A DNA stretch of 64,000 bases from sequence record NC_025447.1, one strand, 5' to 3'. The notes under the pieces are model-generated. The model was not told where the DNA came from. It searched no databases and was given only the letters and a program-made list of their open reading frames with translations. Positions within the stretch are counted from its first letter, which is position 1, and every line of letters begins with the position of its first letter. Shown here in pieces: positions 1 to 41,696 of the stretch. A program made the position numbers and the translations under genes.

Positions 1-353
1 ATCCATGAAGTACAATCTGTCCACGTGTTATAATATGCACCTGAACCAGAAAACGCACTCGGACTTCCAGTTATAAACACTTTTCCAGTACCGTCTTCTT
101 CATATAATTGACAACCACTACTGTTATTTTCCAAAAGGACTCTTTTAACATTAGTCGCACTAAGAATAAATTTACTCGACGCTACACCAGTTCCAGTACC
201 CTGACTGACTGCCGCTGATGCATACAAATTTTTCGTGTATGTATCATGAAAATACATAGCACTACCGCCGGAATATATTTTAAAACGTGTACTAGGATCA
301 GGCGGGTTAGGTGCAATATTCCCGTACTTAATCATTCTAACAAAAGGTAACAT
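1..353 (-). CDS. RCC1/BLIP-II-like repeat protein, MLPF-leader family (runs off window edge)
   Basis: Manual translation MLPFVRMIKYGNIAPNPPDPSTRFKIYSGGSAMYFHDTY...; close paralog of 6107-7255; same upstream cassette. Confidence 0.8.
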   Translation of the reverse strand, partial: MLPFVRMIKYGNIAPNPPDPSTRFKIYSGGSAMYFHDTYTKNLYASAAVSQGTGTGVASSKFILSATNVKRVLLENNSSGCQLYEEDGTGKVFITGSPSAFSGSGAYYNTWTDCTSW

Positions 354-424
354 ATTTCCCTCCTTATTCATTATACTATATTTAATACAAATAAGAATGC
401 TAGTATCAAGTACTGGCCTATATT

Positions 425-1162
425 TTAGACTGAATTGTTAGGATAATATCTCCCACGTCCCCATATTATTCGCACAGCACCACCACCAGCAGCCGTATAA
501 GAAAAATTATCCCATATACTACCACCACCACCATACATCTTACCAGCACCACCACTACCAGCACCACCATTATATGAACCATCGTATCTACCGCCAATAC
601 CATTAGCACCTTGAACAATGATACCAGTACCACCACCCGTACCAATGAACGAGGTATTATAGAATGCACCACCACCACCGCCGCCGCCAGCACCATTTTC
701 ACCAGTGATTGCATCTCCGTTACCACCTTTACCAGTGTAGCCACCAGCACCACCACCAATGACTGCACCACCACTTACACCAGCGTTGCCCCCATTACCA
801 CCACCATCATTAATAGCGTTAGCAGCTTTCCCACCTAGTCCACCAACCCTATATTCACCAGTGAAGCTAACACATAGTTTTTCAGTTCCACGATATAAAC
901 CGTTTTCAACTGCTGTAGTAGTGTTGGGATGTGTAAGAGAAACACTTAAGTACTCACCACTAGTAACCGGAATATTATTACGCCACGATAAGCCGCCACC
1001 AGCACCACGTTGACCACCCGGCGAAATAACACATACTGATATTTCGGTAACGCCAGCAGGAACTGTAAATTGTGTTGTTCCTATTGTCGTGATTAATTGT
1101 TCACCATCTGGCTTATATTCAATTTTATTCCCGTACTTTACCATTCTTCCAAAAGGTAACAT
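425..1162 (-). CDS. Glycine-rich protein with MLPF leader, putative virion/tail-associated
   Basis: ATG after AGGAGG; MLPFGRMVKYGN start; many GGxG/GAGG runs; Gly-rich domains of this style are common in phage tail-associated proteins. Confidence 0.7.
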   Translation of the reverse strand: MLPFGRMVKYGNKIEYKPDGEQLITTIGTTQFTVPAGVTEISVCVISPGGQRGAGGGLSWRNNIPVTSGEYLSVSLTHPNTTTAVENGLYRGTEKLCVSFTGEYRVGGLGGKAANAINDGGGNGGNAGVSGGAVIGGGAGGYTGKGGNGDAITGENGAGGGGGGGAFYNTSFIGTGGGTGIIVQGANGIGGRYDGSYNGGAGSGGAGKMYGGGGSIWDNFSYTAAGGGAVRIIWGRGRYYPNNSV

Positions 1163-1233
1163 ACTTCCTCCTTTATTCATTATACTATATTTAATACAAA
1201 TAAGAAAGCCAGTACTTTGTACTGGCTAAATTA

Positions 1234-2424
1234 TTACAATTGTCTAGGTGTATCCAGTACATATCTATTTGTAGTAGGACCACCATCATCATATGTTCCG
1301 GTTGAATATATATTTTTCATATCAGCAGTTAGGAAAGTACGATACGAACCGCGATATATTTTTATTTTATCATACATAGAATATGTTATTCCTGACGGCA
1401 ATGGACATGCAGTAAATTTACCAATAGTAACATTAGAACCAACACCCAATGAACCAGCATAGGCACTCGCATTTAAACCAGTTGCATATACACCTGTACT
1501 CGTAATTAGTATACTAGATTGTGTTGGGTATCCAGTATGAATTGAATACAAAGTACCAGGTGGTAGAGTAGTACTGTTATTTCCTAAAACTCCATTAACA
1601 GTGCTAGATGTAGTGTTATTTCCCCATGCTCCATTATTAGCTAACCCACCCACTAGGAACTGACGTGCTCCTGTATTTGGATTTTCAACTAAAGCACTTA
1701 CTGCACCAGTTGAGCATCCTGTGTATTGTAACGTTTTTGTGTATGTTGTATTTGGTTGATATAAAGTATATTCATTATATGAAGTCCATGTAGTCGCGGA
1801 ACTTATACCGGATGTAACACCACCAATATATAAATTATTTTGTTTATCAAACAACAATACACAGTTATTTGTTGACTGTATTTGTGCAATATCAACATTA
1901 GGTGTGACCGCTTTTACAAATGAACCATCGGTTATTTCATAAGTAGTTCCCGTTCCATCGGCGAATTGTCTAGCACTGTTCCACCCTGTACTCCATATTG
2001 TATTATTGTCCATTAAGAAAGTAAACCACGTAGTACCTGCATACATCTGTTTAATTGAAGTACTTGAACTTTGTGTGTACAAATTTTGAATATATTGGTT
2101 ATAACTTAAAAACGTAGTAGTACTAGTTGATAAACCAATATGACTACCATATCCACAGTAATAATAATTTGAGTCATTGTCTTTTACTAATAAAGTTCCT
2201 TGTGTAAGCCAGCAATCGTTAACGTTTTCTCTAATTAATGTCCATGATTTTAATGCAGTGTTGTTTCCTCTACCGAATTTCCCAAAACTATTAGTCCCAC
2301 GTGCATATAGTTGACCATCCGTATACAGAACCACAACATCTAAATCAGTTGGGATTATTTTCTTAATTTTAAGTGGTACTGGGGCAATATTCCCATAATT
2401 CATCATTCTTGCAAAAGGTAACAT
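1234..2424 (-). CDS. RCC1/BLIP-II-like repeat protein, MLPF-leader family
   Basis: Motifs LYARGTNSFGKFGRG, IWSTGWNSARQFADG, VYATGLNAS..GSLGVG. Confidence 0.75.
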   Translation of the reverse strand: MLPFARMMNYGNIAPVPLKIKKIIPTDLDVVVLYTDGQLYARGTNSFGKFGRGNNTALKSWTLIRENVNDCWLTQGTLLVKDNDSNYYYCGYGSHIGLSTSTTTFLSYNQYIQNLYTQSSSTSIKQMYAGTTWFTFLMDNNTIWSTGWNSARQFADGTGTTYEITDGSFVKAVTPNVDIAQIQSTNNCVLLFDKQNNLYIGGVTSGISSATTWTSYNEYTLYQPNTTYTKTLQYTGCSTGAVSALVENPNTGARQFLVGGLANNGAWGNNTTSSTVNGVLGNNSTTLPPGTLYSIHTGYPTQSSILITSTGVYATGLNASAYAGSLGVGSNVTIGKFTACPLPSGITYSMYDKIKIYRGSYRTFLTADMKNIYSTGTYDDGGPTTNRYVLDTPRQL

Positions 2425-2495
2425 ATTTCCCTCCTTTATTCATTATACTATATTTAATACAAATAAGAAAGCCAGTACAGTGTACTGGCATTATA

Positions 2496-3635
2496 TTATT
2501 TCCACGGTAGAAGTGAATCAGGAACCCTTGTTGGTACAGTAGTTGAAGACATTCCAGTAAGATTGGGTACACCACATGTGTATAAATTATTATATTCGTC
2601 AACTAACATCGTATAAGAATAGCTCTTACAAAAACTACTAAGATTACTACCTTCTAATGCAGTAAGATCCATTTCAGCGAATGATGTTATATACATATCA
2701 GTTGTACCAATACCACATTGACCATTTGAATTAAGGCCACATGAAAATAACTTATTATTATTATTAATTATACAGGATGGTCCGGTAAGGTTTGTCCCAA
2801 GCTCACCCACCAACTCCACTTCTCCTTGGAATGATAAATTTGGAATTAATGTACTCATTGGGGCTACTGACCTATTTCCTGTACCTGCTTGTCCATAGTC
2901 GTTAATAGATGCAACTTTAACATTACCATCATTAAGAAATATATAAGAAGTTTCATTTGTATTGACTGCTTTAATTGCATTACTAATCGAAGTATCTTGT
3001 GTAAATGTGAGCAAGTTTTGTGTCGTCGTTCCTGATACAAACGTTCTACCTGCATACCAATATGAACCATCATTTAGTACTAATCCAGTACTATATATTG
3101 CACAACCAGCACTGATAACATTTTCTATTGTACTATAGGTGAATCGTGAAACGCTTGAAGTTGATCCATTCCCAAAAACACCACCAGTACCAGCACCACA
3201 GTAGAACCACTTTCCATTTTTTAAAAATACACGCATACACGAAGATATCACAACACTATCAATATCATCTGCACTGACACCGAAATCAGTAAAGTTCTGT
3301 GTTATATCAACCCAAACGCCGTTAGTGTTTGAAGATAGTATTGGAATAACAGTACGTCTACCAGTGTACCAAATAGTACCATCTTTCTTTATAGCAATTG
3401 TTCCTTGTACCCCACCCCAATATCGTGTAACATTTGAGTTGACAAGAGTCCATTCAGTTGAAGAGTCCAATGAACTATTACCACTTTGTCCATATGCTGA
3501 AGAACCAAACCAATATAGATTGCCATTTGTGTGTAAATAAAATTTGGCATCAGCAGAACATTGTAACCTGTTTTTAGGTAGAATCAGTTCAGGTGCGATA
3601 TTCCCGTACTTAACCATTCTTGCAAAAGGTAACAT
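2496..3635 (-). CDS. RCC1/BLIP-II-like repeat protein, MLPF-leader family
   Basis: Start corrected to MLPFARMVKYGN; motifs FGSSAYGQSGN, CGLNSNGQCGIG; paralog of 4890-6032. Confidence 0.8.
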   Translation of the reverse strand: MLPFARMVKYGNIAPELILPKNRLQCSADAKFYLHTNGNLYWFGSSAYGQSGNSSLDSSTEWTLVNSNVTRYWGGVQGTIAIKKDGTIWYTGRRTVIPILSSNTNGVWVDITQNFTDFGVSADDIDSVVISSCMRVFLKNGKWFYCGAGTGGVFGNGSTSSVSRFTYSTIENVISAGCAIYSTGLVLNDGSYWYAGRTFVSGTTTQNLLTFTQDTSISNAIKAVNTNETSYIFLNDGNVKVASINDYGQAGTGNRSVAPMSTLIPNLSFQGEVELVGELGTNLTGPSCIINNNNKLFSCGLNSNGQCGIGTTDMYITSFAEMDLTALEGSNLSSFCKSYSYTMLVDEYNNLYTCGVPNLTGMSSTTVPTRVPDSLLPWK

Positions 3636-3705
3636 ATTCCCTCCTTTATTTGTTATACTATATTTAATACAAATAAGAAAGCCAGTACAGTGTACTGGCA
3701 TTATG

Positions 3706-4815
3706 TTATTTTGGTAAATCAATTTTAGTAAAGACTGCAACATCCTCGATTGCACCTGGAATGGCGTAATACGATCCAGTACTATACACATCTCCATTTT
3801 TGGTTAATATCGATGTCAAACCATCACTAAAAAGAACATCCCTAATCTCACTAACTTCAACGGGTAATTGTAAATTGGTAGCACTATATATAGCACCAGT
3901 TTGAGAATTGTTTAATCCCAAACCACGGTTCGCCCCAACACCCTTCTGATATGTACTAGTAATTACCATTTGTGTAGCAGTATTTAAGGCAGGTGAATTC
4001 GTCATAAACAATGGAGAACTATTAGGCAAAGTACTTACAGGAACTGCACGGAATGTAGTCGTACCTGAACTAAGAAAGTTTGGAGTTTGACCACATACGA
4101 AATATGATGTACCATTATAGTAATTGAATGCATTACCACCAATGGCTGCATCGATTACACCAGAACTACGCAATCCCCAAGTGTTAATTTGTGTTTGGTT
4201 CCCCGTACCATGCTGTCCACTACTATTCCATCCAGAACTATATAGCTTATTATCTAATGTAAGATACATACTATCATTCGCATTGGTCATTACTTTACGA
4301 ACGTTCGTAGCACATTGAGTTAATGTGTAAATTGATGAGGAACCAATACCCAAAGAACCACGATATCCATTATCTCCTGCACCATAGAGTACTGAATTAG
4401 TGCTAAGTACAAATATTAAACCATTTGTACATACAATATTAGCAATTTCACTTACTGGTATAGCATTGGTAAACCAATTAGTCCTTTCAACTAATACAGT
4501 ACTGTAAGAAGTAGTTGTAGAAGATGAGAACCAGTACGTTTGACCTGATGTCCATATCGTATTATCATTTTTAATAATAACAAGTGTACGATCACCCACG
4601 AAAAAATTAGAAACATCTGCACTTACTAATATCCATGAAGATACCGTGTTGGTATTACCATTTCCAGATTCACCACCTTGATTTCTACCTATGTAATATA
4701 AATCATGTGAATCAGTCAATAAGAATTGACCTTGTGTAGAAGCACCAACTTTAATTATATTTTTAGGACCAGGTACAATATTTCCGTACTTAACCATTCT
4801 TGCAAAAGGTAACAT
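3706..4815 (-). CDS. RCC1/BLIP-II-like repeat protein, MLPF-leader family
   Basis: Motifs LYGAGDNGYRGSLGIG, LYSSGWNSSGQHGTG. Confidence 0.8.
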   Translation of the reverse strand: MLPFARMVKYGNIVPGPKNIIKVGASTQGQFLLTDSHDLYYIGRNQGGESGNGNTNTVSSWILVSADVSNFFVGDRTLVIIKNDNTIWTSGQTYWFSSSTTTSYSTVLVERTNWFTNAIPVSEIANIVCTNGLIFVLSTNSVLYGAGDNGYRGSLGIGSSSIYTLTQCATNVRKVMTNANDSMYLTLDNKLYSSGWNSSGQHGTGNQTQINTWGLRSSGVIDAAIGGNAFNYYNGTSYFVCGQTPNFLSSGTTTFRAVPVSTLPNSSPLFMTNSPALNTATQMVITSTYQKGVGANRGLGLNNSQTGAIYSATNLQLPVEVSEIRDVLFSDGLTSILTKNGDVYSTGSYYAIPGAIEDVAVFTKIDLPK

Positions 4816-4889
4816 AATTCCCTCCTTTATTCATTATACTATATTTAATACAAAAAAGAAAAGCCAGTATCAAGTACTGGCATATTACA

Positions 4890-6032
4890 TTATTTCCACG
4901 GTAGAAGGGAATCGGGGACTCTGGTTGGAACTCTCACGGCTGGAACATTTCCAAGTTCAGCCAAACCACTCATATACAAATTGTTATTTTCATCAATTAT
5001 CATTGAATAGAAATTATCAATTACGAAGCCTGAAATTCGTCTTCCTTCTAATGCATCAAGAACCATTTCGGTGAAAGTTAATATATTTTCGGATGTTTGA
5101 TTAACACCACATGCACCATAGGTATTTCGACCACAAGTATATAACTTATTATTATTTTTAACAACACATCCATTCCCTTCGTTGTTGGATAAACCACCCA
5201 CCAACTCTATTTCACCTTGGAATGATAAATTGGGAATTAATGTACTCATTGGTACTGCTGATACTCTACCTACACCAGCTTGACCATATGCATTTGGTGA
5301 AGCAACCTTCACTGAACCATCATTAAGAAATATATATGAAGTACGGTATGTATTTACAGCTTGTATAGCATTGGTGATCGTATTGTCTTTTGTAAAACTT
5401 AATATATTTGATGTTGTTGTACTACCAGGAGCAACAGTATTTCCTGCATACCAATAGGAACCATCATCAAGAACTAACCCAGTACTGAGCAAAGAACAGC
5501 CATAACTTTTAACATTTTCTATAGTGCTGTATCTGAACGATGTGACATTAGCTGTTGACGCGTTACCAAATACACCACCCTCGCCAGCACCACAGTAGAA
5601 CCATTTTCCATTTTTCAAAAATACACGCAAATTCTGTCCAACAGCAATACCATCAATATCATCAGCACTGACACCAAAATCAGTGAAGTACTGGGTTACA
5701 TCAATCCAAACCCCATTTGTATTTGTTCCGATTTGTGGCATTACTATACTAGCACCTGTGAACCAAATAGTTCCATCATTCTTAATGGCAATGGAACCAA
5801 GAACACCACCCCAGTAACGTTCAATATTATTATTCACACGGGTCCATACGGTGGATGATTGTAATGAACCATTACCACCTTGTCCAAATGAAGATGAACC
5901 ATACCAGTACAAGTCACCATTAACATGCAAATAAAAACGAGTATTATAATTTGCTTGTAATCTATTTTTAAATAGAGGTTTTGGTTCTGGTGCTTCATTT
6001 CCGTACTTAACCATTCTTGCAAAAGGTAACAT
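4890..6032 (-). CDS. RCC1/BLIP-II-like repeat protein, MLPF-leader family
   Basis: Motifs YGSSSFGQGGN, ASPNAYGQAGVG, CGRNTYGACGV; ends PTRVPDSLLPWK like 2496-3635. Confidence 0.8.
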   Translation of the reverse strand: MLPFARMVKYGNEAPEPKPLFKNRLQANYNTRFYLHVNGDLYWYGSSSFGQGGNGSLQSSTVWTRVNNNIERYWGGVLGSIAIKNDGTIWFTGASIVMPQIGTNTNGVWIDVTQYFTDFGVSADDIDGIAVGQNLRVFLKNGKWFYCGAGEGGVFGNASTANVTSFRYSTIENVKSYGCSLLSTGLVLDDGSYWYAGNTVAPGSTTTSNILSFTKDNTITNAIQAVNTYRTSYIFLNDGSVKVASPNAYGQAGVGRVSAVPMSTLIPNLSFQGEIELVGGLSNNEGNGCVVKNNNKLYTCGRNTYGACGVNQTSENILTFTEMVLDALEGRRISGFVIDNFYSMIIDENNNLYMSGLAELGNVPAVRVPTRVPDSLLPWK

Positions 6033-6106
6033 AATTCCCTCCTTTATTCATTATACTATATTTAATACAAAAAAGAAAAGCCAGTATCAAGTACTGGCAT
6101 ATCAAA

Positions 6107-7255
6107 TCACTGCAAAAATGACATATCGACTTCGGTATAATTAAGAACGTTCTGTCCAGCAATACCTCCCATTACTACAATTGAAGCCCCACAATAATAT
6201 AACTTCGAAGTGTCAGTAAGTATAAGTGAACCAGATGGGGTGCGTACCAAATTACACGAAGTATTAAACGAAGTATATGAAGGGGTATAAGAGTACTGAT
6301 TAATATTATTACCAACACCTAATTGACCAGACGAGTTGCTTCCAGATGCATAAAGTACTTCATCACCTTTAACTATATGTGACGCCATGTTACCAACACA
6401 AGTATATAAACTATAAACTCCTGAACTCAATAATGTTGGAGTTTTGTATTGTATATCTGTAGATGAAGAAGTACCACCTGTGCCAAATTCGTTCCCGTAT
6501 TGTGCACCGAACTGTTTACCACAAGCGTACAAATTATTATCCGATTTAATAAAAAATGTACTCTGATAACTGACATTACAATCTATAACATCCGAAGAAA
6601 TCATCGTCACCCCAGTAATAGAAGTTTGATTGCCTGTACCTAACTGATAGTAATAGTTAAAACCACAACCCCATAAAGTATTATCTTCTTTTAGGTATAT
6701 GTTACCAACTGCCTTTTTAACCGAAGTTATAGTATCTACCCTTTTGAATGTGTTAAAAGAATTAATGTTTGTACCATCACCAAATGATGATAGGTTAGAG
6801 TTATTGTTAGCTCCACAACAATACAATGTACCATCGTTTGTTATCAAATTTACCTTCATATCATTAAAACTACTCATGTATTTTATATCAGAAACATTAA
6901 TACCACCTGATGTTATCCATGTAGTACAGTCCGTCCACAAAGTTTTTCTATCAGTTACACCAGTGAATGCCTTCGTGTTGCCAGTGATAAAAACTTTTCC
7001 CGTACCTTTCTCTTCGTACAATTGACAATCACTACTGTTATCTTCCAATAGAACTCGTTTAACATTCTCCGCACAAAGAATAAATTTACTCGATGCTACA
7101 CCTGTTCCAGTACCCCAATTCGTCGCAGAAGATGCATACAACTTATCAGTATAAGTATCATGAAGATACATGGAATCACTGGAATATATTTTAAAACGTC
7201 CATCATCACCAGGGGCAATATTCCCGTACTTAACCATTCTTGCAAAAGGTAACAT
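6107..7255 (-). CDS. RCC1/BLIP-II-like repeat protein, MLPF-leader family
   Basis: Start corrected; motifs CGFNYYYQLGTG, SGSNSSGQLGVG. Confidence 0.8.
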   Translation of the reverse strand: MLPFARMVKYGNIAPGDDGRFKIYSSDSMYLHDTYTDKLYASSATNWGTGTGVASSKFILCAENVKRVLLEDNSSDCQLYEEKGTGKVFITGNTKAFTGVTDRKTLWTDCTTWITSGGINVSDIKYMSSFNDMKVNLITNDGTLYCCGANNNSNLSSFGDGTNINSFNTFKRVDTITSVKKAVGNIYLKEDNTLWGCGFNYYYQLGTGNQTSITGVTMISSDVIDCNVSYQSTFFIKSDNNLYACGKQFGAQYGNEFGTGGTSSSTDIQYKTPTLLSSGVYSLYTCVGNMASHIVKGDEVLYASGSNSSGQLGVGNNINQYSYTPSYTSFNTSCNLVRTPSGSLILTDTSKLYYCGASIVVMGGIAGQNVLNYTEVDMSFLQ

Positions 7256-7303
7256 AATTCCCTCCTTATTCATTATATCATATTTACCCAATAAAGAAAA
7301 CCC

Positions 7304-7332
7304 TTGACATCCTTTCAGTACTGTTGTACTAT
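7304..7332 (+). promoter_or_regulatory. sigma70-type promoter for family A array, divergent from the MLPF array
   Basis: TTGACA-17-TACTAT, AGTACT in spacer; AAGGAG RBS before ATG 7358. Confidence 0.8.
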
Positions 7333-7357
7333 AGAAGGAATATAAGGAGAACTACAC

Positions 7358-7585
7358 ATGACAAATACTCTTAAGTACTACCTCAATACTCTAAATGAAC
7401 TAGAGTACGGGGAGTTTCTCTCGGATAGTTCGTGGCTAATTGAGCTAAAAAATTATAATAGTCCAGGATGCACCCTTATGATGAACAATGCAATTGATAC
7501 CCTCATTGTGAGTATTTTACACAGCAACATCTGCGGGGATAGCAATAAACAATTATCAAAAATCTTAGTACTGCTATCTATATGA
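7358..7585 (+). CDS. Small hypothetical protein, family A (divergent)
   Basis: RBS; N-terminal KYYL, C-terminal hydrophobic ILVLLSI. Confidence 0.65.
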   Translation: MTNTLKYYLNTLNELEYGEFLSDSSWLIELKNYNSPGCTLMMNNAIDTLIVSILHSNICGDSNKQLSKILVLLSI

Positions 7586-7785
7586 ATATCGAACAGTACT
7601 ACATCGATGCACTACCAACAAAAGGTCTACGAGAAAGCCTACTGTATACACAAAATACTATTATACACTACAAACGTTGTCCTAAACTCCTGAACTCGTA
7701 CAGGAATAATATCATAAGAAATGCTTTACAAGGGGCAGAAAGTATGCAATACTATTATATCCTTGCCCTTTTAATCGAGTACTAA
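7582..7785 (+). CDS. Small hypothetical protein, family A
   Basis: EQYY...YYILALLIEY. Confidence 0.75.
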   Translation: MNIEQYYIDALPTKGLRESLLYTQNTIIHYKRCPKLLNSYRNNIIRNALQGAESMQYYYILALLIEY

Positions 7786-7786
7786 T

Positions 7787-7996
7787 ATGAATACTGAACA
7801 TAAAGAATTCTACACCAAATACCTTAGCAACGAAGAACAATTGTTTCTAAGGAGTGTATCACCTTTAAGTATAGATACACCACACGCCAGAGATTGCTTT
7901 AATAATTGTATACGTAGTACTCTAGAAGCAATCGAATGTAATAACAAAAATATTATGTACTCTGGTTTAATAGGACTAATATATTTCTATGAATAA
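7787..7996 (+). CDS. Small hypothetical protein, family A
   Basis: HKEFY...FNNCI...LIGLIYFY. Confidence 0.75.
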   Translation: MNTEHKEFYTKYLSNEEQLFLRSVSPLSIDTPHARDCFNNCIRSTLEAIECNNKNIMYSGLIGLIYFYE

Positions 7997-8183
7997 TCAT
8001 AAAGATTTCTATTGTAGTAAACTACCCAAACAAGAACAGCTATCATTCTCTTTAGCACCACCTATGAGAAAGGATAATCTGTATTATAATTACGATTTCA
8101 GGATGGTGACACGTTATGCAATAGAACATACGTTCCCTGCAACTAAGTACCGCTCTATCCTGAACCTCATCTTTAAGTTCTAA
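7989..8183 (+). CDS. Small hypothetical protein, family A
   Basis: HKDFY...ILNLIFKF. Confidence 0.75.
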   Translation: MNNHKDFYCSKLPKQEQLSFSLAPPMRKDNLYYNYDFRMVTRYAIEHTFPATKYRSILNLIFKF

Positions 8184-8235
8184 AAGGTACACCAGGGACC
8201 GAGTACTTTAATATAGTAAGGCTAATTACATTATA

Positions 8236-8421
8236 ATGAATCATATAAGCTACTACTACCAACAACTATCCGACAGAGACAAGTACAGTCACAACTCCCA
8301 TGTGTGGTACTACAAACGCGGCAGTATAAGAGACAAACAACATTACTTCTGTATTTCTATTAAAGAAGCACTAACAACTAAGTACACGTACCGAGCAGTA
8401 CTTAAACTTATTGAAATGTAA
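8236..8421 (+). CDS. Small hypothetical protein, family A
   Basis: HISYYY...YRAVLKLI. Confidence 0.7.
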   Translation: MNHISYYYQQLSDRDKYSHNSHVWYYKRGSIRDKQHYFCISIKEALTTKYTYRAVLKLIEM

Positions 8422-8429
8422 GGAAGAAA

Positions 8430-8612
8430 ATGAATATAGAATTCTATTTAACTAAACTACAACACGCCGAAAGATTCAACTTCAATAAGTTCAATATTTT
8501 CTACAATTGCGGGAACAAAAAAGATAAACACACCTTCCTATATGTCGTCACAAGAGATGCACAAAACGAAAAGTACACATACAGAGAAGTAATGAAACTA
8601 ATCGCTATTTAA
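8430..8612 (+). CDS. Small hypothetical protein, family A
   Basis: IEFYL...YREVMKLI; AAGGAAG RBS. Confidence 0.7.
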   Translation: MNIEFYLTKLQHAERFNFNKFNIFYNCGNKKDKHTFLYVVTRDAQNEKYTYREVMKLIAI

Positions 8613-8620
8613 GGAATACT

Positions 8621-8800
8621 ATGCAACAATTCTATATAGAACGTATAACCATAAAAGACCGTTTCATGTACGACACCTTCGTTGATTACTACAACCTAGG
8701 AACAAAAAGTACTAAAAATATTAATCTCAATAGCTGCATTTATGCTGTACTAACACAAGATAATCCCTACAGGGAAATCCTCGCACTGGCATCTATATAA
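8621..8800 (+). CDS. Small hypothetical protein, family A (59 aa, not in ORF track)
   Basis: AAGGA RBS; MQQFYIERI...NSCIYAVL...YREILALASI. Confidence 0.7.
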   Translation: MQQFYIERITIKDRFMYDTFVDYYNLGTKSTKNINLNSCIYAVLTQDNPYREILALASI

Positions 8801-8810
8801 AGGAAACCAA

Positions 8811-9482
8811 ATGAAACTTAATGCACACAGCAAACAATACCTTAAGCACTTTAAGTACCTCAATAGTATTCAGGCAGAATCCGTTACATCTGCATATACG
8901 TATCACCCGAATGTACTAAAGAAACGAAATAAAAAGGAAAAATCCAGTACAAATGGAGTTAACGTATCAAAGAACCTTGAATTGTACATGAAGAAAAATA
9001 ATATAGCTGTTCATTATATGAATATCTATAATACTGATTTAAAAGTATTGAGTACTAATACGAGCACGAAGGTACTAAAGAACGCATCCTTCATCATCAA
9101 TATGCAGTTGGATAATACCCCGTGCACTTTAATGCTATACTTCGGGAATACATACTTCTTCGGGAATTGTAACACCTCCCACGATGTCAATACAGCACAA
9201 TTCCAAATGGGTGGCATATACTCTACTGATGCAGAAAAAGTACACGAGAATATGCACTTCTGGCAAGCACAACGTACAGAAGAAACTAAATCAATTGTAG
9301 ATTTCCTCAAAGAACTAGAACACAAAGAACTACAGGAAGAAGAACTATTCATGTACAGTACTGTAATCGATAATCCAGTACTCTATAAAAACGCGTACAA
9401 TCTGACAAAACATGTACAGGAAATTATCAGTACTAATAAGAAAATGCATCACCTCATTACGTATATTACAAACTATGTATAA
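8811..9482 (+). CDS. Hypothetical protein carrying family C motif
   Basis: AAGGA RBS; EEELFMYSTVID near C-terminus. Confidence 0.7.
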   Translation: MKLNAHSKQYLKHFKYLNSIQAESVTSAYTYHPNVLKKRNKKEKSSTNGVNVSKNLELYMKKNNIAVHYMNIYNTDLKVLSTNTSTKVLKNASFIINMQLDNTPCTLMLYFGNTYFFGNCNTSHDVNTAQFQMGGIYSTDAEKVHENMHFWQAQRTEETKSIVDFLKELEHKELQEEELFMYSTVIDNPVLYKNAYNLTKHVQEIISTNKKMHHLITYITNYV

Positions 9483-9657
9483 AGAATACTATATCTCTAA
9501 ACTACCCGTGCAGCAAAAATACTTTGCTGCATACAAAGTTCTTCTCATAACTCGTGCCGCTCGATCTAACTACATGAATAGCGTAAAACGTGCTATAGAA
9601 AATGATGACGCAATGAACCAGTACTATAACATTTTACTACTAATATATAAGTACTAA
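9475..9657 (+). CDS. Small hypothetical protein, family A
   Basis: Start corrected; MYKEYY...YYNILLLIYKY. Confidence 0.8.
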   Translation: MYKEYYISKLPVQQKYFAAYKVLLITRAARSNYMNSVKRAIENDDAMNQYYNILLLIYKY

Positions 9658-9667
9658 AGAGAACAAC

Positions 9668-9850
9668 ATGCACAAAGAATACTACAGGGATAAAATACCT
9701 ATGCATCTCCAGCACCATATACCAACAGAACCAATAGGAATAAAAGATCACGCAAAGATAATGTTCCAACAATGTACTAAGTACACGCTCATATACGATG
9801 ATAATCCATATATGCTGTACTACGTAGTAATGCTAACATTCAGGTACTAA
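9668..9850 (+). CDS. Small hypothetical protein, family A
   Basis: MHKEYY...FQQCT...LTFRY. Confidence 0.8.
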   Translation: MHKEYYRDKIPMHLQHHIPTEPIGIKDHAKIMFQQCTKYTLIYDDNPYMLYYVVMLTFRY

Positions 9851-9851
9851 T

Positions 9852-10043
9852 ATGAATAACCACAAAGAATACTACATAGAGAAACTCCCAATGTATCTCC
9901 AACACCTTGTACCAACAGAACCATTGGGTATAGAAAAAAACTACGAAAAAGACTACTTCATTCAGTGCACTAAATCCTCGATATATATTGAAGACTATAA
10001 TCGAGTACTGTATCACATCCTTTTACTAATATATAAGTACTAA
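9852..10043 (+). CDS. Small hypothetical protein, family A
   Basis: HKEYY...FIQCT...LLLIYKY. Confidence 0.8.
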   Translation: MNNHKEYYIEKLPMYLQHLVPTEPLGIEKNYEKDYFIQCTKSSIYIEDYNRVLYHILLLIYKY

Positions 10044-10044
10044 T

Positions 10045-10227
10045 ATGCACAAAGAATACTACACACAATTTCTCCCCAGCATTTTTGAACACTACGCCAG
10101 ATATAAAGTCCCTCTGGATAACGATTTGGCAGTACTGGGATTCAATAACTGCATAGAACGAAGTATAGAAAATAGTAGTAGTTATGACCAGCTATATAAC
10201 ACTATCCTACTTATATTCAGGTACTAA
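10045..10227 (+). CDS. Small hypothetical protein, family A
   Basis: MHKEYY...FNNCI...LLIFRY. Confidence 0.8.
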   Translation: MHKEYYTQFLPSIFEHYARYKVPLDNDLAVLGFNNCIERSIENSSSYDQLYNTILLIFRY

Positions 10228-10228
10228 C

Positions 10229-10417
10229 ATGCATAAAGAATACTACACAAAATATTTCCCAATGTACCTCAGAACTAATCTATTAGATAAACCTCGCGGT
10301 ATCAATGCACAAAATGATAAAGTGTATTTTACTATGTGCACTAAAGCATGTATACTAGATTTTGACAGCTACCATCGAGTACTGTATCATACCCTGTACC
10401 TAGCTTTCGTATTCTAA
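10229..10417 (+). CDS. Small hypothetical protein, family A
   Basis: Start corrected; MHKEYY...FTMCT; close to 9852-10043. Confidence 0.8.
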   Translation: MHKEYYTKYFPMYLRTNLLDKPRGINAQNDKVYFTMCTKACILDFDSYHRVLYHTLYLAFVF

Positions 10418-10426
10418 GAGAACAAT

Positions 10427-10612
10427 ATGCATAAAGAATTCTACTTAAGCCATCTGGATCTAAACTCCCAAATGCTTATACCACTAATCCCAATAGATAT
10501 CAAGGATAAGAAAAATACCGAACAATTCATTTACCATACACAGTGTGCGATCACCCCAAATTACATTCCATATGAATTGTACTACATTCTCGCCCTAATA
10601 TATAGGTACTAA
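10427..10612 (+). CDS. Small hypothetical protein, family A
   Basis: MHKEFY...LALIYRY. Confidence 0.8.
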   Translation: MHKEFYLSHLDLNSQMLIPLIPIDIKDKKNTEQFIYHTQCAITPNYIPYELYYILALIYRY

Positions 10613-10613
10613 T

Positions 10614-10799
10614 ATGCATAGAGAATACTACACACAATTTGTTAAAGGGAACTACAAACATGCCGTACCCAGAACCCCTTTAAATTCTCATGACCCAAGT
10701 ACTATATTCTTGTTTAATGACGCAATACGTACAGTACTCAATACTAAAGATGAAGATGTGCAGTACGTATTCTTACTATTACTTATATACAGACACTAA
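10614..10799 (+). CDS. Small hypothetical protein, family A
   Basis: MHREYY...LLLIYRH. Confidence 0.8.
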   Translation: MHREYYTQFVKGNYKHAVPRTPLNSHDPSTIFLFNDAIRTVLNTKDEDVQYVFLLLLIYRH

Positions 10800-10804
10800 C
10801 TAAT

Positions 10805-10987
10805 ATGAATAAAGAACATAAAGAATTCTATATAAGAAAACTAACATTCGTCCCCGTAAGAATATATAAAGAATGCGACCCAAGATTATACCTATGGCAC
10901 TTCAATGAGTGCATAAAAGATTCTATATACCCTAAGAACTATAAAGAACAATTGTGCTCAGTACTAACACTAGTACTATCATATTAA
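10805..10987 (+). CDS. Small hypothetical protein, family A
   Basis: HKEFY...FNECI...LVLSY. Confidence 0.8.
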   Translation: MNKEHKEFYIRKLTFVPVRIYKECDPRLYLWHFNECIKDSIYPKNYKEQLCSVLTLVLSY

Positions 10988-11002
10988 TTAATAGAGAATA
11001 CT

Positions 11003-11194
11003 ATGTATAAAAACTTCTATATAAGTAAACTAAAAGAAAATGAACAAGTATGGATTAGATCTATAATTCCACTGGCATTTAATAGATATGCATTTAACAG
11101 ATGTACCGAGATTGCTATAGACCCTTATAATATTAAAGAGAATGTACAGTATAATCAGTACTACTATATCTTAATGCTTATATATAGGAAGTAA
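11003..11194 (+). CDS. Small hypothetical protein, family A
   Basis: MYKNFY...FNRCT...LMLIYRK. Confidence 0.8.
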   Translation: MYKNFYISKLKENEQVWIRSIIPLAFNRYAFNRCTEIAIDPYNIKENVQYNQYYYILMLIYRK

Positions 11195-11821
11195 TTAAAC
11201 ACAAGTAGACAGGGGAAGCTCCTAGTGAACAACCTTTATGTACAGGCGAATTGTTAAAATTCAGCCTGGACAAATGCGATCACTAGGATTCTCCCCAGGC
11301 TAAACCCCGTAATCATAGGTAGTCATAAGTAATCATATATAAACATTTAAGTAATCATTTATAATCACTGTAGTGATCAGTAGTGATCAGTAGTGAGTAC
11401 TAGAGTACAGGAATGTTCACGTTTAATCAAGAACGTAGCAGTACTGATATGCCACTAAGTAGGCAGAGGAAGTCTGCCGTACTTTGTAGTTTCCAAGCTC
11501 CTTTTCCATTTTGCAAATTACATCAAATGTAATCAAAAGTAATCACGCAATGATTAGTACTGAATTATTACTTTCACCTTAATTTCAATTACCCCTTTAC
11601 CCTTCGGGGTAAAATTCAATTACCCCTTGAGGCTCCAGCAAAAAGTTGGTTAGTACTCCATCCTAAATCTCGATCCTAAAAATTTTGGAGTACCTATGAA
11701 ATAAAAGTTGGATCTTCGAAAGTTGAAATTTACGTTGGGACATATAGGATTTGTGGGATATAATGAGTTTTGTAGCGATACAGATTATACGATTTCAGTA
11801 CTGAATAATGAAAGAAAGCTA

Positions 11822-11849
11822 TTGACATTATGATTCAGTACTGTATAAT
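11822..11849 (+). promoter_or_regulatory. sigma70-type promoter with no downstream gene
   Basis: TTGACA-16-TATAAT with AGTACTG just before the -10. Confidence 0.75.
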
Positions 11850-12221
11850 GTTCTACATAGAGAGATGAGTTGCTGCGAACAATTCATTTACTCTACCTCC
11901 TGTCGTGAGACAGTACAGAAAAGATAGTTCCTCCTGTGGTGGTACATCTTTTTGAACCTCATATGAAAATCGTAATAACAGTACTGATATTAACAGAATG
12001 GTGTCAGTACTGATTTTAATCTAAAGCATTATGCCACCAGCTTGTGCTGGTGGATTCCCTCTAACAGTATTCAGTACTACATGATAGTCTTCATCCTCCT
12101 ACAGTAACAGTGAGGGCTATTGTGGCAGTACTGAATACTCCCTTTCAAAAGATAGATCTATGGTATAGTACTGACGGATTTTGGGCGTAGTAACCCTAGG
12201 TTGAATTTAGACGTAGAGATG

Positions 12222-36538: not shown

Positions 36539-36781
36539 ATGAAAGTACTATCTGAATTAGAAATGCATAATAGATTATACAAGTACTACCATTTACTTAA
36601 ACCTATACAGAGGATTAAGTGTCCCTTTGAAGTGAAACAGGTTTTAATTTATGAGCATAAGTTCTTTGTATCATTAGGTACGAACCATCAAGAGTACTTT
36701 TTGAAGTTGTACTTGATTACATTAATAGATTTAATTCACTATAAAACCAAACAAGCTAATAAAGAGAAATATGAAAACTAA
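36539..36781 (+). CDS. Family B small protein
   Basis: GTNHQE; start corrected. Confidence 0.8.
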   Translation: MKVLSELEMHNRLYKYYHLLKPIQRIKCPFEVKQVLIYEHKFFVSLGTNHQEYFLKLYLITLIDLIHYKTKQANKEKYEN

Positions 36782-37112
36782 AATTCAACTCAGGGTATAC
36801 ATATCGTATGAAAATATATACGTTAAAAGTAGTCTATGTAAAGATGTAATGGACTACAAAGGTAAACCATTCACAGTTACTTACAGTTTAACAGGAGGTT
36901 TATATATCTCTTTTGCTAATTACGAAAATAATATGTACGAACACATTGACATTGAAGATTTAAGTACTTTATCACCAGAGGAATACTTTCAGGAATCATT
37001 AGTATGGGATTTAGAGTTTCCTATGCCATTAGTACATAAGATGATAGTACTAATGAAAGAATCTAAACAGGAGCCTAATGGTGATTATGAAGAACACATT
37101 ATTGAGTATTAA
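36771..37112 (+). CDS. Family C protein
   Basis: EEYFQESLVWD. Confidence 0.75.
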   Translation: MKTKIQLRVYISYENIYVKSSLCKDVMDYKGKPFTVTYSLTGGLYISFANYENNMYEHIDIEDLSTLSPEEYFQESLVWDLEFPMPLVHKMIVLMKESKQEPNGDYEEHIIEY

Positions 37113-37144
37113 GAGTTCTGATAGTACTGATAGTACAAATGTTC

Positions 37145-37173
37145 TTGACAGTACTTTTCATTACTGATATAGT
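37145..37173 (+). promoter_or_regulatory. sigma70-type promoter
   Basis: TTGACA-17-TATAGT with TGn extension. Confidence 0.7.
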
Positions 37174-37202
37174 GCACCAACGTTAATCATAGGGTACAGA
37201 TT

Positions 37203-37448
37203 ATGTTAAAATTTTTAAATTTCCTTATCGTCTTGTGTATTGTTCTTGGAATTGCACCGTTTGTATTAGCGTATCTGGATTCAGATGAAATGCAGAAGAT
37301 GAATTGCACAAAGACAGGACAGAGTAGAGAAGAGACGGTTATGATGCCTGTAACGGTTATTGTGAATAACATACCAATTACGAACATGATTCCTACCCTA
37401 ACGACAACGTACCAGTACTCTTGTACAGATGGAGAGAGGTGGAGATGA
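37203..37448 (+). CDS. Small membrane-anchored protein
   Basis: N-terminal TM FLNFLIVLCIVLGIAPFVLA; two further Cys in the C-domain. Confidence 0.7.
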   Translation: MLKFLNFLIVLCIVLGIAPFVLAYLDSDEMQKMNCTKTGQSREETVMMPVTVIVNNIPITNMIPTLTTTYQYSCTDGERWR

Positions 37449-37765
37449 AATTTAATATAGCAAAAACATCGAATGTATGTATATTTGGTTATGCAGATGA
37501 GTTAGGTGATATTGACATTCTTTTGTACAAAAAGGATGGTGTTATGCATTTCAAGTACCAGGATGAAGAGGCAGACAATTATCCTTTACCTAATTTAGTA
37601 CAAATGCAGGAAGAGGAATTATTCCAGTACAGCTTAGTATATGACATTGATATTTGCACGATGCCAGTACTAATTAATATTCAAAAAGTGATGCTCGATG
37701 TGTTTGATAGGCTAATACAAGGCACACAAGGAAGAACCATATATGTCAATGTACAAGACAATTAA
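37445..37765 (+). CDS. Family C protein
   Basis: EEELFQYSLVYD; start corrected. Confidence 0.75.
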   Translation: MKFNIAKTSNVCIFGYADELGDIDILLYKKDGVMHFKYQDEEADNYPLPNLVQMQEEELFQYSLVYDIDICTMPVLINIQKVMLDVFDRLIQGTQGRTIYVNVQDN

Positions 37766-37958
37766 TCAAGAATGGAAGACCCAAAAGTACAGGGAATTCA
37801 GTACTAGTTTAACAAAAGATGCATTGAATTTAAAAAGAACAGAGTTTGATATGTTTATTTTTCTTGGAACACGTTCACAGGAACAATACATTCATTATTA
37901 TATAAGTTCATTGCGAACGGAGATCGTATGCAAAACACAGGGTATTATAAAAAAGTAA
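37743..37958 (+). CDS. Family B small protein
   Basis: GTRSQE. Confidence 0.75.
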   Translation: MSMYKTINQEWKTQKYREFSTSLTKDALNLKRTEFDMFIFLGTRSQEQYIHYYISSLRTEIVCKTQGIIKK

Positions 37959-38194
37959 ACCAATATTTGTACGCTACAAAGTACAGGGATTTTTGTTTAA
38001 AGGGTGGTGATGAAGATTTTTCTTTGCGATTATCAGAATTTAATCTGTTATTTTATCTTGGTACATCGGAACAAGAAGAAATGGCACAGAAATTTATCAA
38101 GCACCTTGAACAAAAAATTCATATGCAAATTTTGATGCTTAAGGTACATAATGAGATAAACAAATATGAACCCAACAATAGTACAGGATCTTAA
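37928..38194 (+). CDS. Family B small protein
   Basis: GTSEQE. Confidence 0.75.
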   Translation: MQNTGYYKKVNQYLYATKYRDFCLKGGDEDFSLRLSEFNLLFYLGTSEQEEMAQKFIKHLEQKIHMQILMLKVHNEINKYEPNNSTGS

Positions 38195-38552
38195 ACAAGT
38201 AATATTCCTTTTGAATACAAGAAGTGAATTGTATACAGAGTTAGAAGAGATTAATGCATTTTATCAGAATTTTGTAATTCAAGAGTTCAGTGATTTAATT
38301 ACAGATGCATTATTTGAATTCTCGGAGAAATACAAAGGAACAGAGTTCAGTGTTAAGAATGTTATTCGTCCAATTACAAGGAAAATTATATTATCACATT
38401 TTACATTTGACAATAAAGATTTATTCAGTCATAATCCAAGTACAGCTTTATATTTTATTCCTGATTCAGACAAAAATCATCCTATTCATTACGGATGGAT
38501 TTTGTCGTACATAGTACAAGGAAAGGAGTATCCTATTAAATGGAACGATTAG
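38166..38552 (+). CDS. Hypothetical protein
   Basis: 128 aa ORF in operon. Confidence 0.65.
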   Translation: MNPTIVQDLKQVIFLLNTRSELYTELEEINAFYQNFVIQEFSDLITDALFEFSEKYKGTEFSVKNVIRPITRKIILSHFTFDNKDLFSHNPSTALYFIPDSDKNHPIHYGWILSYIVQGKEYPIKWND

Positions 38553-38892: not shown

Positions 38893-38900
38893 GGCAAATT

Positions 38901-41104: not shown

Positions 41105-41129
41105 GATATGGGCTTTTTTCGTTTTGGTA

Positions 41130-41158: not shown

Positions 41159-41186
41159 GTGTAATCATTTTAAAGGAGAACATATA

Positions 41187-41687: not shown

Positions 41688-41696
41688 GGAGAACAT

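What the first reader, a model, noticed from the sequence alone, without database searches (positions are those of the whole stretch)
1..7290. Self-contained gene-cassette array: repeated terminator-promoter-RBS unit fused to a conserved 12-residue leader (MLPFARMVKYGN)
Seen: seven tandem minus-strand genes share ~110 bp of near-identical DNA spanning the upstream gene's terminator (GCCAGTAC..TACTGGC + T-run), a TATTAAATA/TATAAT box, AGGAGG and 12 codons. Identity collapses right after KYGN(I/E)AP. Established: TATAAATA is the T4-type late promoter; G.N..GQLG.G repeats define RCC1/BLIP-II propellers. Inference: each gene is an independently expressed cassette, and the conserved junction acts as a homologous-recombination handle for swapping, gaining or losing variable propeller genes. 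The peptide may also be an assembly or targeting tag that docks different heads onto one virion site.
Basis: partly seen in the sequence, partly recalled or inferred. Interest (0 to 1): 0.75.

Follow-up and report, generated by a model that had tools for sequence, protein, structure and literature searches.

The report
Shuffled virion-protein cassettes with shared tag
A giant E. coli phage carries a row of genes for different binding proteins that all start with the same 12-residue peptide and are separated by the same terminator-promoter unit, and related phages have gained, lost and reordered these genes by recombining exactly at that shared unit.

Summary
The window is indistinguishable from Escherichia phage 121Q (Asteriusvirus, a Rak2-like jumbo phage) over the array. 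It holds the promoter-proximal seven of about twelve minus-strand cassettes.

Six junctions carry a hairpin plus T-run, a 20-nt box, AGGAGG and an identical 12-codon leader. The protein bodies are only 25-31% identical.

Five complete genes (and by similarity the cut seventh) are RCC1-like seven-bladed propellers. The sixth gene is a glycine-rich domain protein, not a propeller.

Comparison of seven related phages shows 8-15 cassettes in different orders. 203 of 205 homology break-ends lie inside the unit. One clean single-cassette indel has its crossover within 43 nt that are almost entirely leader codons.

The leader is conserved as a peptide in at least five genera, on unrelated folds (RCC1, Kelch, laminin-G, glycine-rich), even where the DNA unit is absent. 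AlphaFold2 predicts it as a free tail on two folds. Published proteomics finds such proteins in virions of phAPEC6, CBB and GAP32.

Best reading: PeSL-like cassette shuffling of virion proteins that share a virion-incorporation tag. Where the tag docks, outside or inside the virion, is unresolved. This is a new variant of known kinds.

The parts
6107..7255 (-). G1, cassette type C: leader plus RCC1-like propeller, 382 aa
   Evidence: Pfam RCC1 and RCC1_2 above cut-off. 100% identical to 121Q gene 248. The phAPEC6 orthologue gp549 was detected in virions.
7256..7320 (-). Upstream region of the first cassette: variant box and AGGAGG, no terminator hairpin
   Evidence: Alignment A1; fold. The box matches 13 of 14 positions of the CBB neck-gene late motif listed in that paper's Table S7.
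7304..7332 (+). Sigma-70-like promoter match facing the divergent plus-strand small genes
   Evidence: Scan, 10 of 12 matches. Consensus match only.
6033..6106 (-). Junction unit G1>G2: hairpin 6080-6098, T-run, box 6049-6068, AGGAGG
4890..6032 (-). G2, type F: leader plus RCC1-like propeller, 380 aa
   Evidence: 64% identical to G4 in the body.
4816..4889 (-). Junction unit G2>G3: hairpin 4863-4881, box 4832-4851
3706..4815 (-). G3, type A: leader plus seven-bladed RCC1-like propeller, 369 aa
   Evidence: AlphaFold2 pLDDT 85.7, pTM 0.87, residues 1-16 below 50. Foldseek TM 0.79 to UVR8.
3636..3705 (-). Junction unit G3>G4: hairpin 3681-3699, box 3651-3670 (2 mismatches)
2496..3635 (-). G4, type D: leader plus RCC1-like propeller, 379 aa
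2425..2495 (-). Junction unit G4>G5: hairpin 2471-2489, box 2441-2460
1234..2424 (-). G5, type B: leader plus RCC1-like propeller, 396 aa
1163..1233 (-). Junction unit G5>G6: hairpin 1207-1227, box 1178-1197
425..1162 (-). G6, type E: leader plus glycine-rich domain protein, 245 aa, not a propeller
   Evidence: No Pfam hit; phrog_4474; homologues carry PF21722. AlphaFold2 pLDDT 92.5, residues 1-10 below 50. Foldseek top hit is the cyanophage Pam3 fiber, probability 0.97 but TM 0.30.
354..424 (-). Junction unit G6>G7: degenerate hairpin 399-417, box 369-388
1..353 (-). G7, type J: leader plus the first 117 residues of an RCC1-like gene cut by the window edge (121Q gene 242)
   Evidence: 69% aa identity to G1 over the part present; 100% identical to the 121Q cassette.

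Best explanation
The region is the promoter-proximal half of a cassette array in a 121Q-type jumbo phage.

Each cassette encodes a virion-associated protein built from two parts. The first is a conserved 12-residue N-terminal peptide that sticks out as a free tail. The second is a variable ligand-binding head: an RCC1-like propeller here, once a glycine-rich domain, and in other genera Kelch or laminin-G folds.

Shown:
- the anatomy of the repeat;
- the folds of two heads;
- conservation of the peptide across genera and folds;
- cassette number and order differ among close relatives, and the homology break-ends lie in the conserved unit, one crossover mapped almost wholly within the leader codons.

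Inferred:
- In this genus each cassette is a separate late transcription unit: an intrinsic terminator for the gene before it, then a late-type box and a strong ribosome-binding site.
- The roughly 150 nt of shared DNA (junction plus leader codons) serves the phage's homologous recombination as a crossover site. Whole cassettes are deleted, duplicated, moved or imported from other lineages without breaking a head domain, as PeSL elements do in T4-like phages.
- The peptide is the tag by which any head is incorporated into the virion at a common partner.
- I favour display on the outside (fibres, whiskers or capsid) as exchangeable adhesin-like heads, about 55:25 over packaging inside the head. 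That split is the least certain step.
For: Anatomy.

Bodies against junction: bodies are 25-31% identical while the junction is near-identical.

Folds:
- RCC1-like;
- glycine-rich, with Foldseek likeness to the Pam3 tail-fibre receptor-binding protein;
- RCC1 propellers form the distal part of tail-fibre proteins in other phages;
- Kelch and laminin-G heads carry the same leader in CBB and in IMG/VR contigs.

Leader as a peptide:
- 21 of 21 array genes read in CBB and EJP2 begin with it, and 5 of 5 in Yersinia phage fHe-Yen9-04; 3 of 3 in Xanthomonas phage XaC1 carry a variant;
- synonymous codon differences separate the lineages;
- in CBB and the Yersinia phage it is present without the repeated DNA unit;
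- glycine-rich homologues outside this phage group lack it;
- it is disordered in both models.

Virion association:
- phAPEC6 Table 1 lists eight array proteins (mapped);
- CBB_536, 537, 548, 549, 551, 552 and 553 and GAP32 gp001 were detected.

Late box: the CBB late motif found upstream of structural genes includes the leader-bearing genes.

Recombination:
- cassette orders in seven phages;
- 203 of 205 ends of segments with at least 88% identity lie within -115 to +50 of a leader start, against 14% expected;
- PBECO4 and CRJP21 differ by one 1220-nt cassette and otherwise by 4 mismatches in 10.2 kb, with the crossover interval at -2 to +40;
- the UE-S1 block shared with EJP2 ends at +37 of a leader;
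- a two-cassette block is duplicated at 100% identity in phAPEC6;
- leader variants track both neighbours.
Against: - There is no transcript, 5'-end or termination data for this phage group at this locus. The box is known only as an in-silico motif.
- Mosaic boundaries at cassette edges would also be seen if recombinants inside heads arise but are lost by selection. The enrichment therefore shows where surviving junctions lie, not the crossover rate.
- The break-end counts are not independent, because the phages are related and pairs were counted both ways.
- Virion detection in phAPEC6 rests on 1-5 peptides per protein, in a list that also holds some enzymes.
- No study locates these proteins in the particle, and no partner for the peptide is known.
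- The likeness of G6 to a tail-fibre tip is weak (TM 0.30; no sequence hit in PDB).
Confidence: 0.62

Rival explanations
1. The leader is a T4-type capsid targeting sequence. The heads are packaged inside the capsid with the DNA and are perhaps ejected into the host as binders or inhibitors of host proteins, like the diverse T-even internal proteins that share only their targeting sequence.
For: - Rak2-like phages share the T4-type head assembly genes, including a prohead protease and scaffold (phAPEC6 Table 1; CBB paper).
- T-even internal proteins are described as highly diverse, with only a conserved targeting sequence (PMC3012670).
- Targeting sequences are 10-20 residue N-terminal peptides, and diverged paralogues of phage SPN3US keep identical N-termini (PMC5694885).
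- The array proteins are found in virions, and an inner body is seen in phAPEC6.
- Fast turnover between near-identical phages fits an arms race.
Against: - Those proteases cut after glutamate. None of the seven window genes has a glutamate in residues 1-12, and 41 of 77 Asteriusvirus cassettes have none in the first 20.
- The heads are lectin-like or adhesin-like folds of 24-43 kDa that are not basic, pI 5.1-8.8.
- The same folds sit at the distal ends of tail fibres in other phages.
Confidence: 0.2
2. The conservation is regulatory only. The unit is kept because it is a good terminator, promoter and translation start region. The first 12 codons are conserved for efficient initiation, and the peptide itself does nothing.
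For: - Within the genus the leader is nearly invariant at synonymous sites too: for example, one Leu codon and one Pro codon in 39 of 39 genes.
- The start region is no more structured than shuffled sequence, as expected for an open initiation region.
Against: - In other genera the same residues are kept with different codons.
- They are kept in tightly packed or translationally coupled genes that lack the DNA unit.
- The most conserved columns of the whole protein family lie in the leader.
- Positions 5 and 9 vary freely while their neighbours do not.
Confidence: 0.08
3. The repeats are just the residue of recent tandem duplication, or of assembly error, with no role in rearrangement.
For: One block in phAPEC6 is duplicated at 100% identity. 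That could be very recent duplication or an assembly artefact.
Against: - Bodies have diverged to 25-31% identity while junctions stay near-identical.
- The same architecture occurs in 37 independent genome records, with 5-16 junction copies each.
- Orders differ between phages whose flanks are collinear.
Confidence: 0.02

Closest known systems
PeSL elements (promoter-early stem-loops) of T4-like phages (PMC2839356, PMC4122927)
   Same: A conserved intergenic unit of about 100 bp made of a stem-loop terminator, a promoter and a Shine-Dalgarno sequence directly before the start codon. The units flank variable genes. Insertions, deletions and replacements between close relatives have their crossovers inside the unit.
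   Different: - Here the promoter part has no -35 element and resembles the putative late motif of Rak2-like phages, not an early sigma-70 promoter.
- The homology runs about 40 nt into the coding sequence and encodes a peptide that is itself conserved.
- The cassettes encode one class of virion proteins rather than assorted ORFans.
- The host phage is a Rak2-like jumbo phage.
- Promoter activity, terminator activity and circular intermediates have not been examined here.
T-even internal proteins and Alt with their capsid targeting sequence (PMC3012670, PMC5694885)
   Same: A short conserved N-terminal peptide is shared by otherwise unrelated proteins that end up in the particle. The protein set is highly variable between related phages.
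   Different: There is no conserved glutamate cleavage site after the peptide. The heads are large lectin-like folds rather than small basic proteins. An internal location is not shown. No tool returned a T4 internal protein as a relative, so sequence likeness was not tested.
SPN3US gp53/gp54 paralogues (PMC5694885)
   Same: Diverged paralogues (34% identity) in a giant phage keep identical N-terminal 15 residues, which the authors read as a targeting signal.
   Different: That is two genes, with long propeptides that are cleaved. Here there are 8-15 genes per genome, a 12-residue tag, several folds, and a DNA-level repeat around the tag.
Glycine-rich receptor-binding tips: Pam3 gp24 and S16 gp38 (PMC9608196)
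   Same: G6 pairs a beta-sandwich with a glycine-rich domain, and its best structural match is the Pam3 fiber. In those proteins an N-terminal part docks the protein and the glycine-rich part recognises the host.
   Different: The match is weak (TM 0.30). G6 has no helical docking domain; the 12-residue leader stands in its place. Trimer formation has not been examined.
Tail fibre proteins with a conserved N-terminal anchor and an RCC1-like distal domain (Pseudomonas phages Littlefix and PollyC in BFVD)
   Same: The same propeller fold serves as the distal part of a fibre whose N-terminus is a known tail-attachment domain.
   Different: Those are single long proteins of 867-1365 aa. Here the head is a separate protein of about 40 kDa with only a peptide as a possible anchor.

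Membership tests
PeSL-type regulatory cassette | Conserved composite intergenic unit: stem-loop plus promoter plus Shine-Dalgarno sequence before the start codon | tested here: met
   Six units of 70-74 nt, each with a hairpin, box and AGGAGG.
PeSL-type regulatory cassette | The promoter part is a strong early sigma-70-like promoter with -35 and -10 boxes and an AT-rich upstream region | tested here: not met
   The sigma-70 scan lists none of the six boxes, and total sites are below shuffle expectation. A TATAAT is present, but the hairpin and T-run occupy the -35 position. The box resembles the CBB late motif.
PeSL-type regulatory cassette | Indels and replacements between close relatives with the crossover inside the unit | tested here: met
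   One crossover is mapped to a 43-nt interval.
PeSL-type regulatory cassette | Measured promoter and terminator activity; circular recombination products | not testable with these tools
   Needs transcript and DNA data from infected cells.
T4-type capsid targeting sequence | N-terminal peptide of 10-20 residues shared by otherwise unrelated particle proteins | tested here: met
   The same 12 residues sit on RCC1, glycine-rich, Kelch and laminin-G proteins. Virion detection in relatives comes from the literature.
T4-type capsid targeting sequence | The peptide is removed by the prohead protease, which cuts after glutamate | tested here: not met
   No glutamate in residues 1-12 of any window gene. 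None in the first 20 residues of 41 of 77 cassettes. Actual processing is not testable here.
T4-type capsid targeting sequence | The proteins lie inside the head | not testable with these tools
   No localisation data were found.
RCC1-like beta-propeller (PF00415, PF13540, PF25390) | RCC1 repeats above Pfam's cut-off | tested here: met
   RCC1_2 scores 24.2-40.2 bits against a cut-off of 22 for G1-G5. There is no hit for G6.
RCC1-like beta-propeller (PF00415, PF13540, PF25390) | Seven-bladed propeller fold | tested here: met
   G3 model pLDDT 85.7; TM 0.79 to UVR8, then the HERC, RPGR and RCC1 domains.
RCC1-like beta-propeller (PF00415, PF13540, PF25390) | Chromatin or DNA condensation function, as the database names suggest | not tested
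   Nothing supports it. The pI values are 5.1-8.8, and the name is inherited from the eukaryotic family.
Glycine-rich domain proteins (PF21722; Pam3 gp24-like) | Glycine-rich domain recognisable by profile | tested here: inconclusive
   A direct Pfam scan of G6 finds nothing, yet many homologues carry PF21722, and G6 matches phrog_4474 at E 2e-69.
Glycine-rich domain proteins (PF21722; Pam3 gp24-like) | Fold of a tail-fibre receptor-binding tip | tested here: inconclusive
   Foldseek probability 0.97 and E 9.5e-4 to the Pam3 fiber, but TM 0.30. No PDB sequence hit.

The most novel reading that the evidence does not exclude
A 12-residue peptide works as a universal plug. It is conserved for a long time across at least five genera of Rak2-like jumbo phages (hosts Escherichia, Salmonella, Pectobacterium, Cronobacter and Yersinia, with a variant in a Xanthomonas phage). 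Through it, heads of unrelated folds compete for one docking site on the particle.

In Asteriusvirus the plug's own codons, together with a late promoter and a terminator, have become the recombination site that reshuffles the head repertoire. One genome would then give particles with a mixed and rapidly evolvable set of binding heads.
Probability: 0.3. Interest if true: 0.8.

Novelty: new variant of a known kind. Interest (0 to 1): 0.62.

Why it matters
Many copies of RCC1-like genes in 121Q-type phages, and their presence in virions, are already in the literature. There they are read as DNA condensation proteins.

Three things I did not find described in the papers I could search:
- all of these proteins, and unrelated folds in sister genera, share one N-terminal peptide;
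- in Asteriusvirus each gene sits in a repeated terminator-promoter-leader unit;
- natural isolates differ by whole cassettes, with crossovers in that unit.

If the peptide is a docking tag, it names a concrete partner to look for in the still unassigned fibres, whiskers or inner body of these particles. It would also explain why otherwise near-identical jumbo phages differ mainly at this locus.

It also extends the PeSL idea from early ORFan regions of T4-like phages to late virion genes, with the homology reaching into the coding sequence.

Tried and rejected
- An RNA switch in which the leader codons pair with the ribosome-binding site: the pairing is only about -4 kcal/mol, and three of the four start regions folded are no more structured than shuffles (z +0.3 to +1.0); the G6 copy forms a different small hairpin (z -2.4). 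Rejected.
- Known RNA families: none in 1-12000.
- Defence-system families: no PADLOC hit for the six complete proteins.
- A DNA condensation role: no support beyond the inherited name; the proteins are not basic.
- Copies of the unit or leader elsewhere in the window: none.
- Copies elsewhere in 121Q: all IMG/VR matches for that genome fall in the array.
- Peptide-level evidence for or against removal of the leader: the CBB supplements held as text list no peptides.
- Transcription data: the Sharanji and UE-S1 papers say nothing on this locus.
- A sequence match of G6 to solved structures: none.
- The first overall identity of 96.2% to 121Q was an artefact of paralogous pieces being joined. 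Cassette by cassette the window is 100% identical to 121Q.

- I used neither in any tool call nor in this report. The comparison with T4 rests only on the papers cited.
- To search for the leader I wrote it as a degenerate pattern derived from the window's own copies (and a notebook entry). That is a search pattern, not a reconstructed sequence. In this report conservation is given as counts.


Full report
**Identity of the window**

The first 7.5 kb match Escherichia phage 121Q (Asteriusvirus, 348.5 kb) along their whole length. Cassette by cassette the seven genes are 100% identical to 121Q genes 248 to 242.

In 121Q the array continues through gene 234. It holds eleven cassettes with the standard leader, plus a twelfth with a divergent leader. 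The window therefore holds only the promoter-proximal part.

Three 121Q cassettes, all outside the window, are annotated in two pieces each (genes 239/240, 237/238 and 234/235). I did not analyse the kind of break. No gene inside the window is broken; G7 is merely cut by the window edge.

**The observation**

Minus-strand genes start at 7255, 6032, 4815, 3635, 2424, 1162 and 353. For G6 the mechanical ORF start at 1180 lies inside the box; the start after AGGAGG at 1162 matches 121Q gene 243.

The six intergenic spaces are 70-74 nt and all have the same layout:
- a hairpin of 7-9 pairs;
- an interrupted T-run;
- the 20-nt box;
- AGGAGG;
- ATG 5-7 nt after the AGGAGG.

Chance expectation for the box, the hairpin and the leader is 0.05, 0.04 and 0.00 matches against 6, 6 and 7 found.

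Five hairpins are stable (the three folded: -10.9 to -13.3 kcal/mol, z about -4.3 to -5.3; two more have identical stem-loops). The G6>G7 hairpin has decayed.

Upstream of G1 there is a variant box and no hairpin. A sigma-70-like site there faces the divergent plus-strand genes.

Identity is complete over the first 10 nt of coding sequence and still 0.78 at nt 30-39. It drops to background by nt 50.

**The proteins**

G1-G5 carry RCC1 repeats. Their bodies are 25-31% identical to one another, except G2/G4 at 64%. G7 is 69% identical to G1 over the part present.

G3 was modelled with an alignment of 16 sequences. It is a confident seven-bladed propeller (pLDDT 85.7, pTM 0.87). Its best PDB matches are UVR8 (TM 0.79) and the RCC1-like domains of HERC1/2, RPGR and RCC1.

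G6 is different. It is 29% glycine, has no Pfam hit, matches phrog_4474, and has homologues that carry PF21722. Its model is confident (pLDDT 92.5). Its only PDB match below E 0.001 is the tail fibre of cyanophage Pam3 (probability 0.97, but TM 0.30). In that fibre the glycine-rich domain is the receptor-binding tip, akin to S16 gp38. The match is a lead, not proof, and there is no sequence-level hit.

In both models the leader is the only long low-confidence stretch (residues 1-16 and 1-10). It is therefore not part of either fold.

**The leader as a peptide**

In the alignment of G3 with relatives and window paralogues, six of the thirteen invariant columns are leader positions.

The same peptide begins every array gene I read in:
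- the divergent Asteriusvirus EJP2 (13 of 13);
- Pectobacterium phage CBB, genus Mimasvirus (8 of 8: Kelch, laminin-G and unassigned proteins);
- GAP32 gp001;
- several IMG/VR jumbo-phage contigs.

Five tandem RCC1 genes of Yersinia phage fHe-Yen9-04 (Eneladusvirus) carry it as well. Three genes of Xanthomonas phage XaC1 carry a variant with Phe at position 2 and Ile at position 4.

Counts over 68 genes found with a relaxed pattern: positions 1-4, 10 and 12 are the same residue in all 68. This pattern fixed four of those six positions outright, and it required Arg or Gln at position 6, where all 68 have Arg. Position 11 is Gly in 59. Positions 5 and 9 take six and eight different residues.

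The pattern-free sample confirms positions 1-4, 10 and 12. It shows that position 6 can be Ile in two Kelch proteins.

Codons differ between lineages: the Pro codon is CCT in 52 of 52 Asteriusvirus genes but CCA in 15 of 16 genes of other genera, and the Tyr, Gly and Arg codons are mixed.

In CBB and the Yersinia phage the genes are packed or translationally coupled, without the repeated terminator-box unit. Homologues of G6 outside this phage group lack the leader and begin differently.

The peptide is therefore selected as a peptide. It has been joined to heads of independent origin.

**Virion association (literature)**

- The phAPEC6 proteome lists gp003, 005, 006, 007, 009, 010, 549 and 551. 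All are array members. gp549 and gp551 are orthologues of the window's G1 and G2. Peptide counts are low (1-5).
- In CBB, the proteins CBB_536, 537, 548, 549, 551, 552 and 553 were detected, with coverage up to 51%. Their coordinates match the leader-bearing genes.
- GAP32 gp001 was also detected. The CBB authors noted its many homologues in 121Q and PBECO4.
- None of these papers, nor those on fEgEco12, BF17, Sharanji or UE-S1, mentions the shared peptide or the repeated unit.
- The fEgEco12 paper does note that two of the few strongly divergent proteins between two isolates of one species are of this family.

**Expression**

The CBB authors derived a motif from the upstream regions of structural genes and proposed it as a late promoter, together with a gp55-like sigma factor. 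Their list includes the promoters of four leader-bearing genes.

The box before the window's first cassette matches the CBB neck-gene entry at 13 of 14 positions. The repeated box matches another entry at 12 of 14.

The first genes of the arrays in GAP32, the Yersinia phage and IMG/VR contigs have the same core upstream. Late expression is thus a reasonable inference, but no transcript data exist.

In relatives several junctions (H>A, K>R, R>L, L>O, L>S) have no hairpin or box, and the stop codon abuts the ribosome-binding site. Independent expression is therefore a feature of most cassettes, not of all.

**Recombination**

The orders are:

| Phage | Cassette order |
|---|---|
| 121Q / window | C F A D B E J G K L O |
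| PBECO4 | H A D C B M G I N |
| G17 | P H A Q C F B E K R L S |
| CRJP21 | H A D B M G I N |
| UE-S1 | C T U A V E B I W |
| phAPEC6 | C X F X F A Y Z B E G K L O S |
| EJP2 | A a b T U c d e f g h i j |

In the five arrays fetched with both flanks, the flanking genes are collinear.

Further evidence:
- Of 205 ends of inter-phage segments (at least 88% identity, at least 400 nt), 203 lie between -115 and +50 of a leader start. A uniform spread would put 14% there.
- PBECO4 and CRJP21 are identical apart from 4 mismatches in 10.2 kb and one 1220-nt cassette. The CRJP21 junction equals the left PBECO4 junction up to +40 and the right one from -2 onward. The exchange therefore lies in those 43 nt, almost all leader codons.
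- The UE-S1 block shared with EJP2 (88.9% over 3.8 kb, with EJP2-type junctions inside it) ends at +37 of the next leader. The array then continues with cassette A, which sits elsewhere in EJP2.
- phAPEC6 has a two-cassette block repeated at 100% identity.
- The same head carries different leader variants in different phages, and the variant depends on the upstream neighbour. Mismatches per 39 nt are 1.46 (same head, same neighbour), 3.57 (same head, different neighbour), 4.70 (different head, same neighbour) and 6.36 (both different).
- The junction unit occurs 5-16 times in each of the 37 Asteriusvirus-type records.

Limits: the events are not phylogenetically independent, and selection against chimeric heads would sharpen the pattern.

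**Comparison with known systems**

The DNA side works like PeSL elements of T4-like phages. It fails the early sigma-70 promoter criterion and differs in reaching into the coding sequence.

The protein side works like a capsid targeting sequence. It lacks the conserved glutamate cleavage site, and its heads have folds typical of external binders.

I therefore file the region under neither family. I describe it as a new variant that combines both principles.

**What remains open**

- the location of the proteins in the particle;
- the partner of the peptide;
- the ligands of the heads;
- the real transcription pattern.

The leader was written as a degenerate search pattern built from the window's own copies.

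Noticed in passing
window 9412-11194 (+): A second tandem array: nine or so genes of 60-81 aa, spaced about 185-195 nt apart. They have conserved N-termini (most begin MHKEYY or close to it) and conserved hydrophobic C-termini, with repeated DNA across each gene boundary (repeat families D7-D10).
   Followed up: partly
window 36771-56229 (+): Two further paralogue families among the densely packed plus-strand genes. One has 8 members of about 110-140 aa; the other has 7 members of about 145-165 aa, mostly in tandem at 46957-50346.
   Followed up: partly
L008 (phage CBB), L017 (GAP32), L021 (XaC1), L022 (fHe-Yen9-04), L002/L003 (phAPEC6): In several relatives the leader-bearing genes lie at or next to the end of the genome record. 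In CBB they lie directly beside the annotated 22-kb terminal repeat. Only for CBB is the physical end documented in what I read, so this may partly reflect how records were opened.
   Followed up: no
proteins P0021-P0058 (homologues of G6 from other phages and metagenomes): Glycine-rich homologues outside the Rak2-like group lack the leader. Many share a different short N-terminal start (Met, Leu or Ile, Glu, then hydrophobic residues), which hints at other group-specific N-terminal tags on the same head.
   Followed up: no
L003 1-3500 and 6000-8100 (phAPEC6): Several leader-bearing cassettes of phAPEC6 have no annotated CDS in the record, or a misplaced start. The published count of eleven RCC1-like genes is therefore lower than the 15 or more cassettes present.
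   Followed up: partly
L005 (G17) terminator features; CBB Table S8: The hairpin stem built around CCAGTAC/GTACTGG recurs in terminators outside the array in these phages. The terminator part of the unit may therefore be a genome-wide type rather than array-specific.
   Followed up: no
proteins P0003, P0009, P0013, P0051: Array proteins appear under Escherichia coli names on contigs of 93-358 kb in public assemblies. These are probably phage genomes carried along in bacterial assemblies.
   Followed up: no
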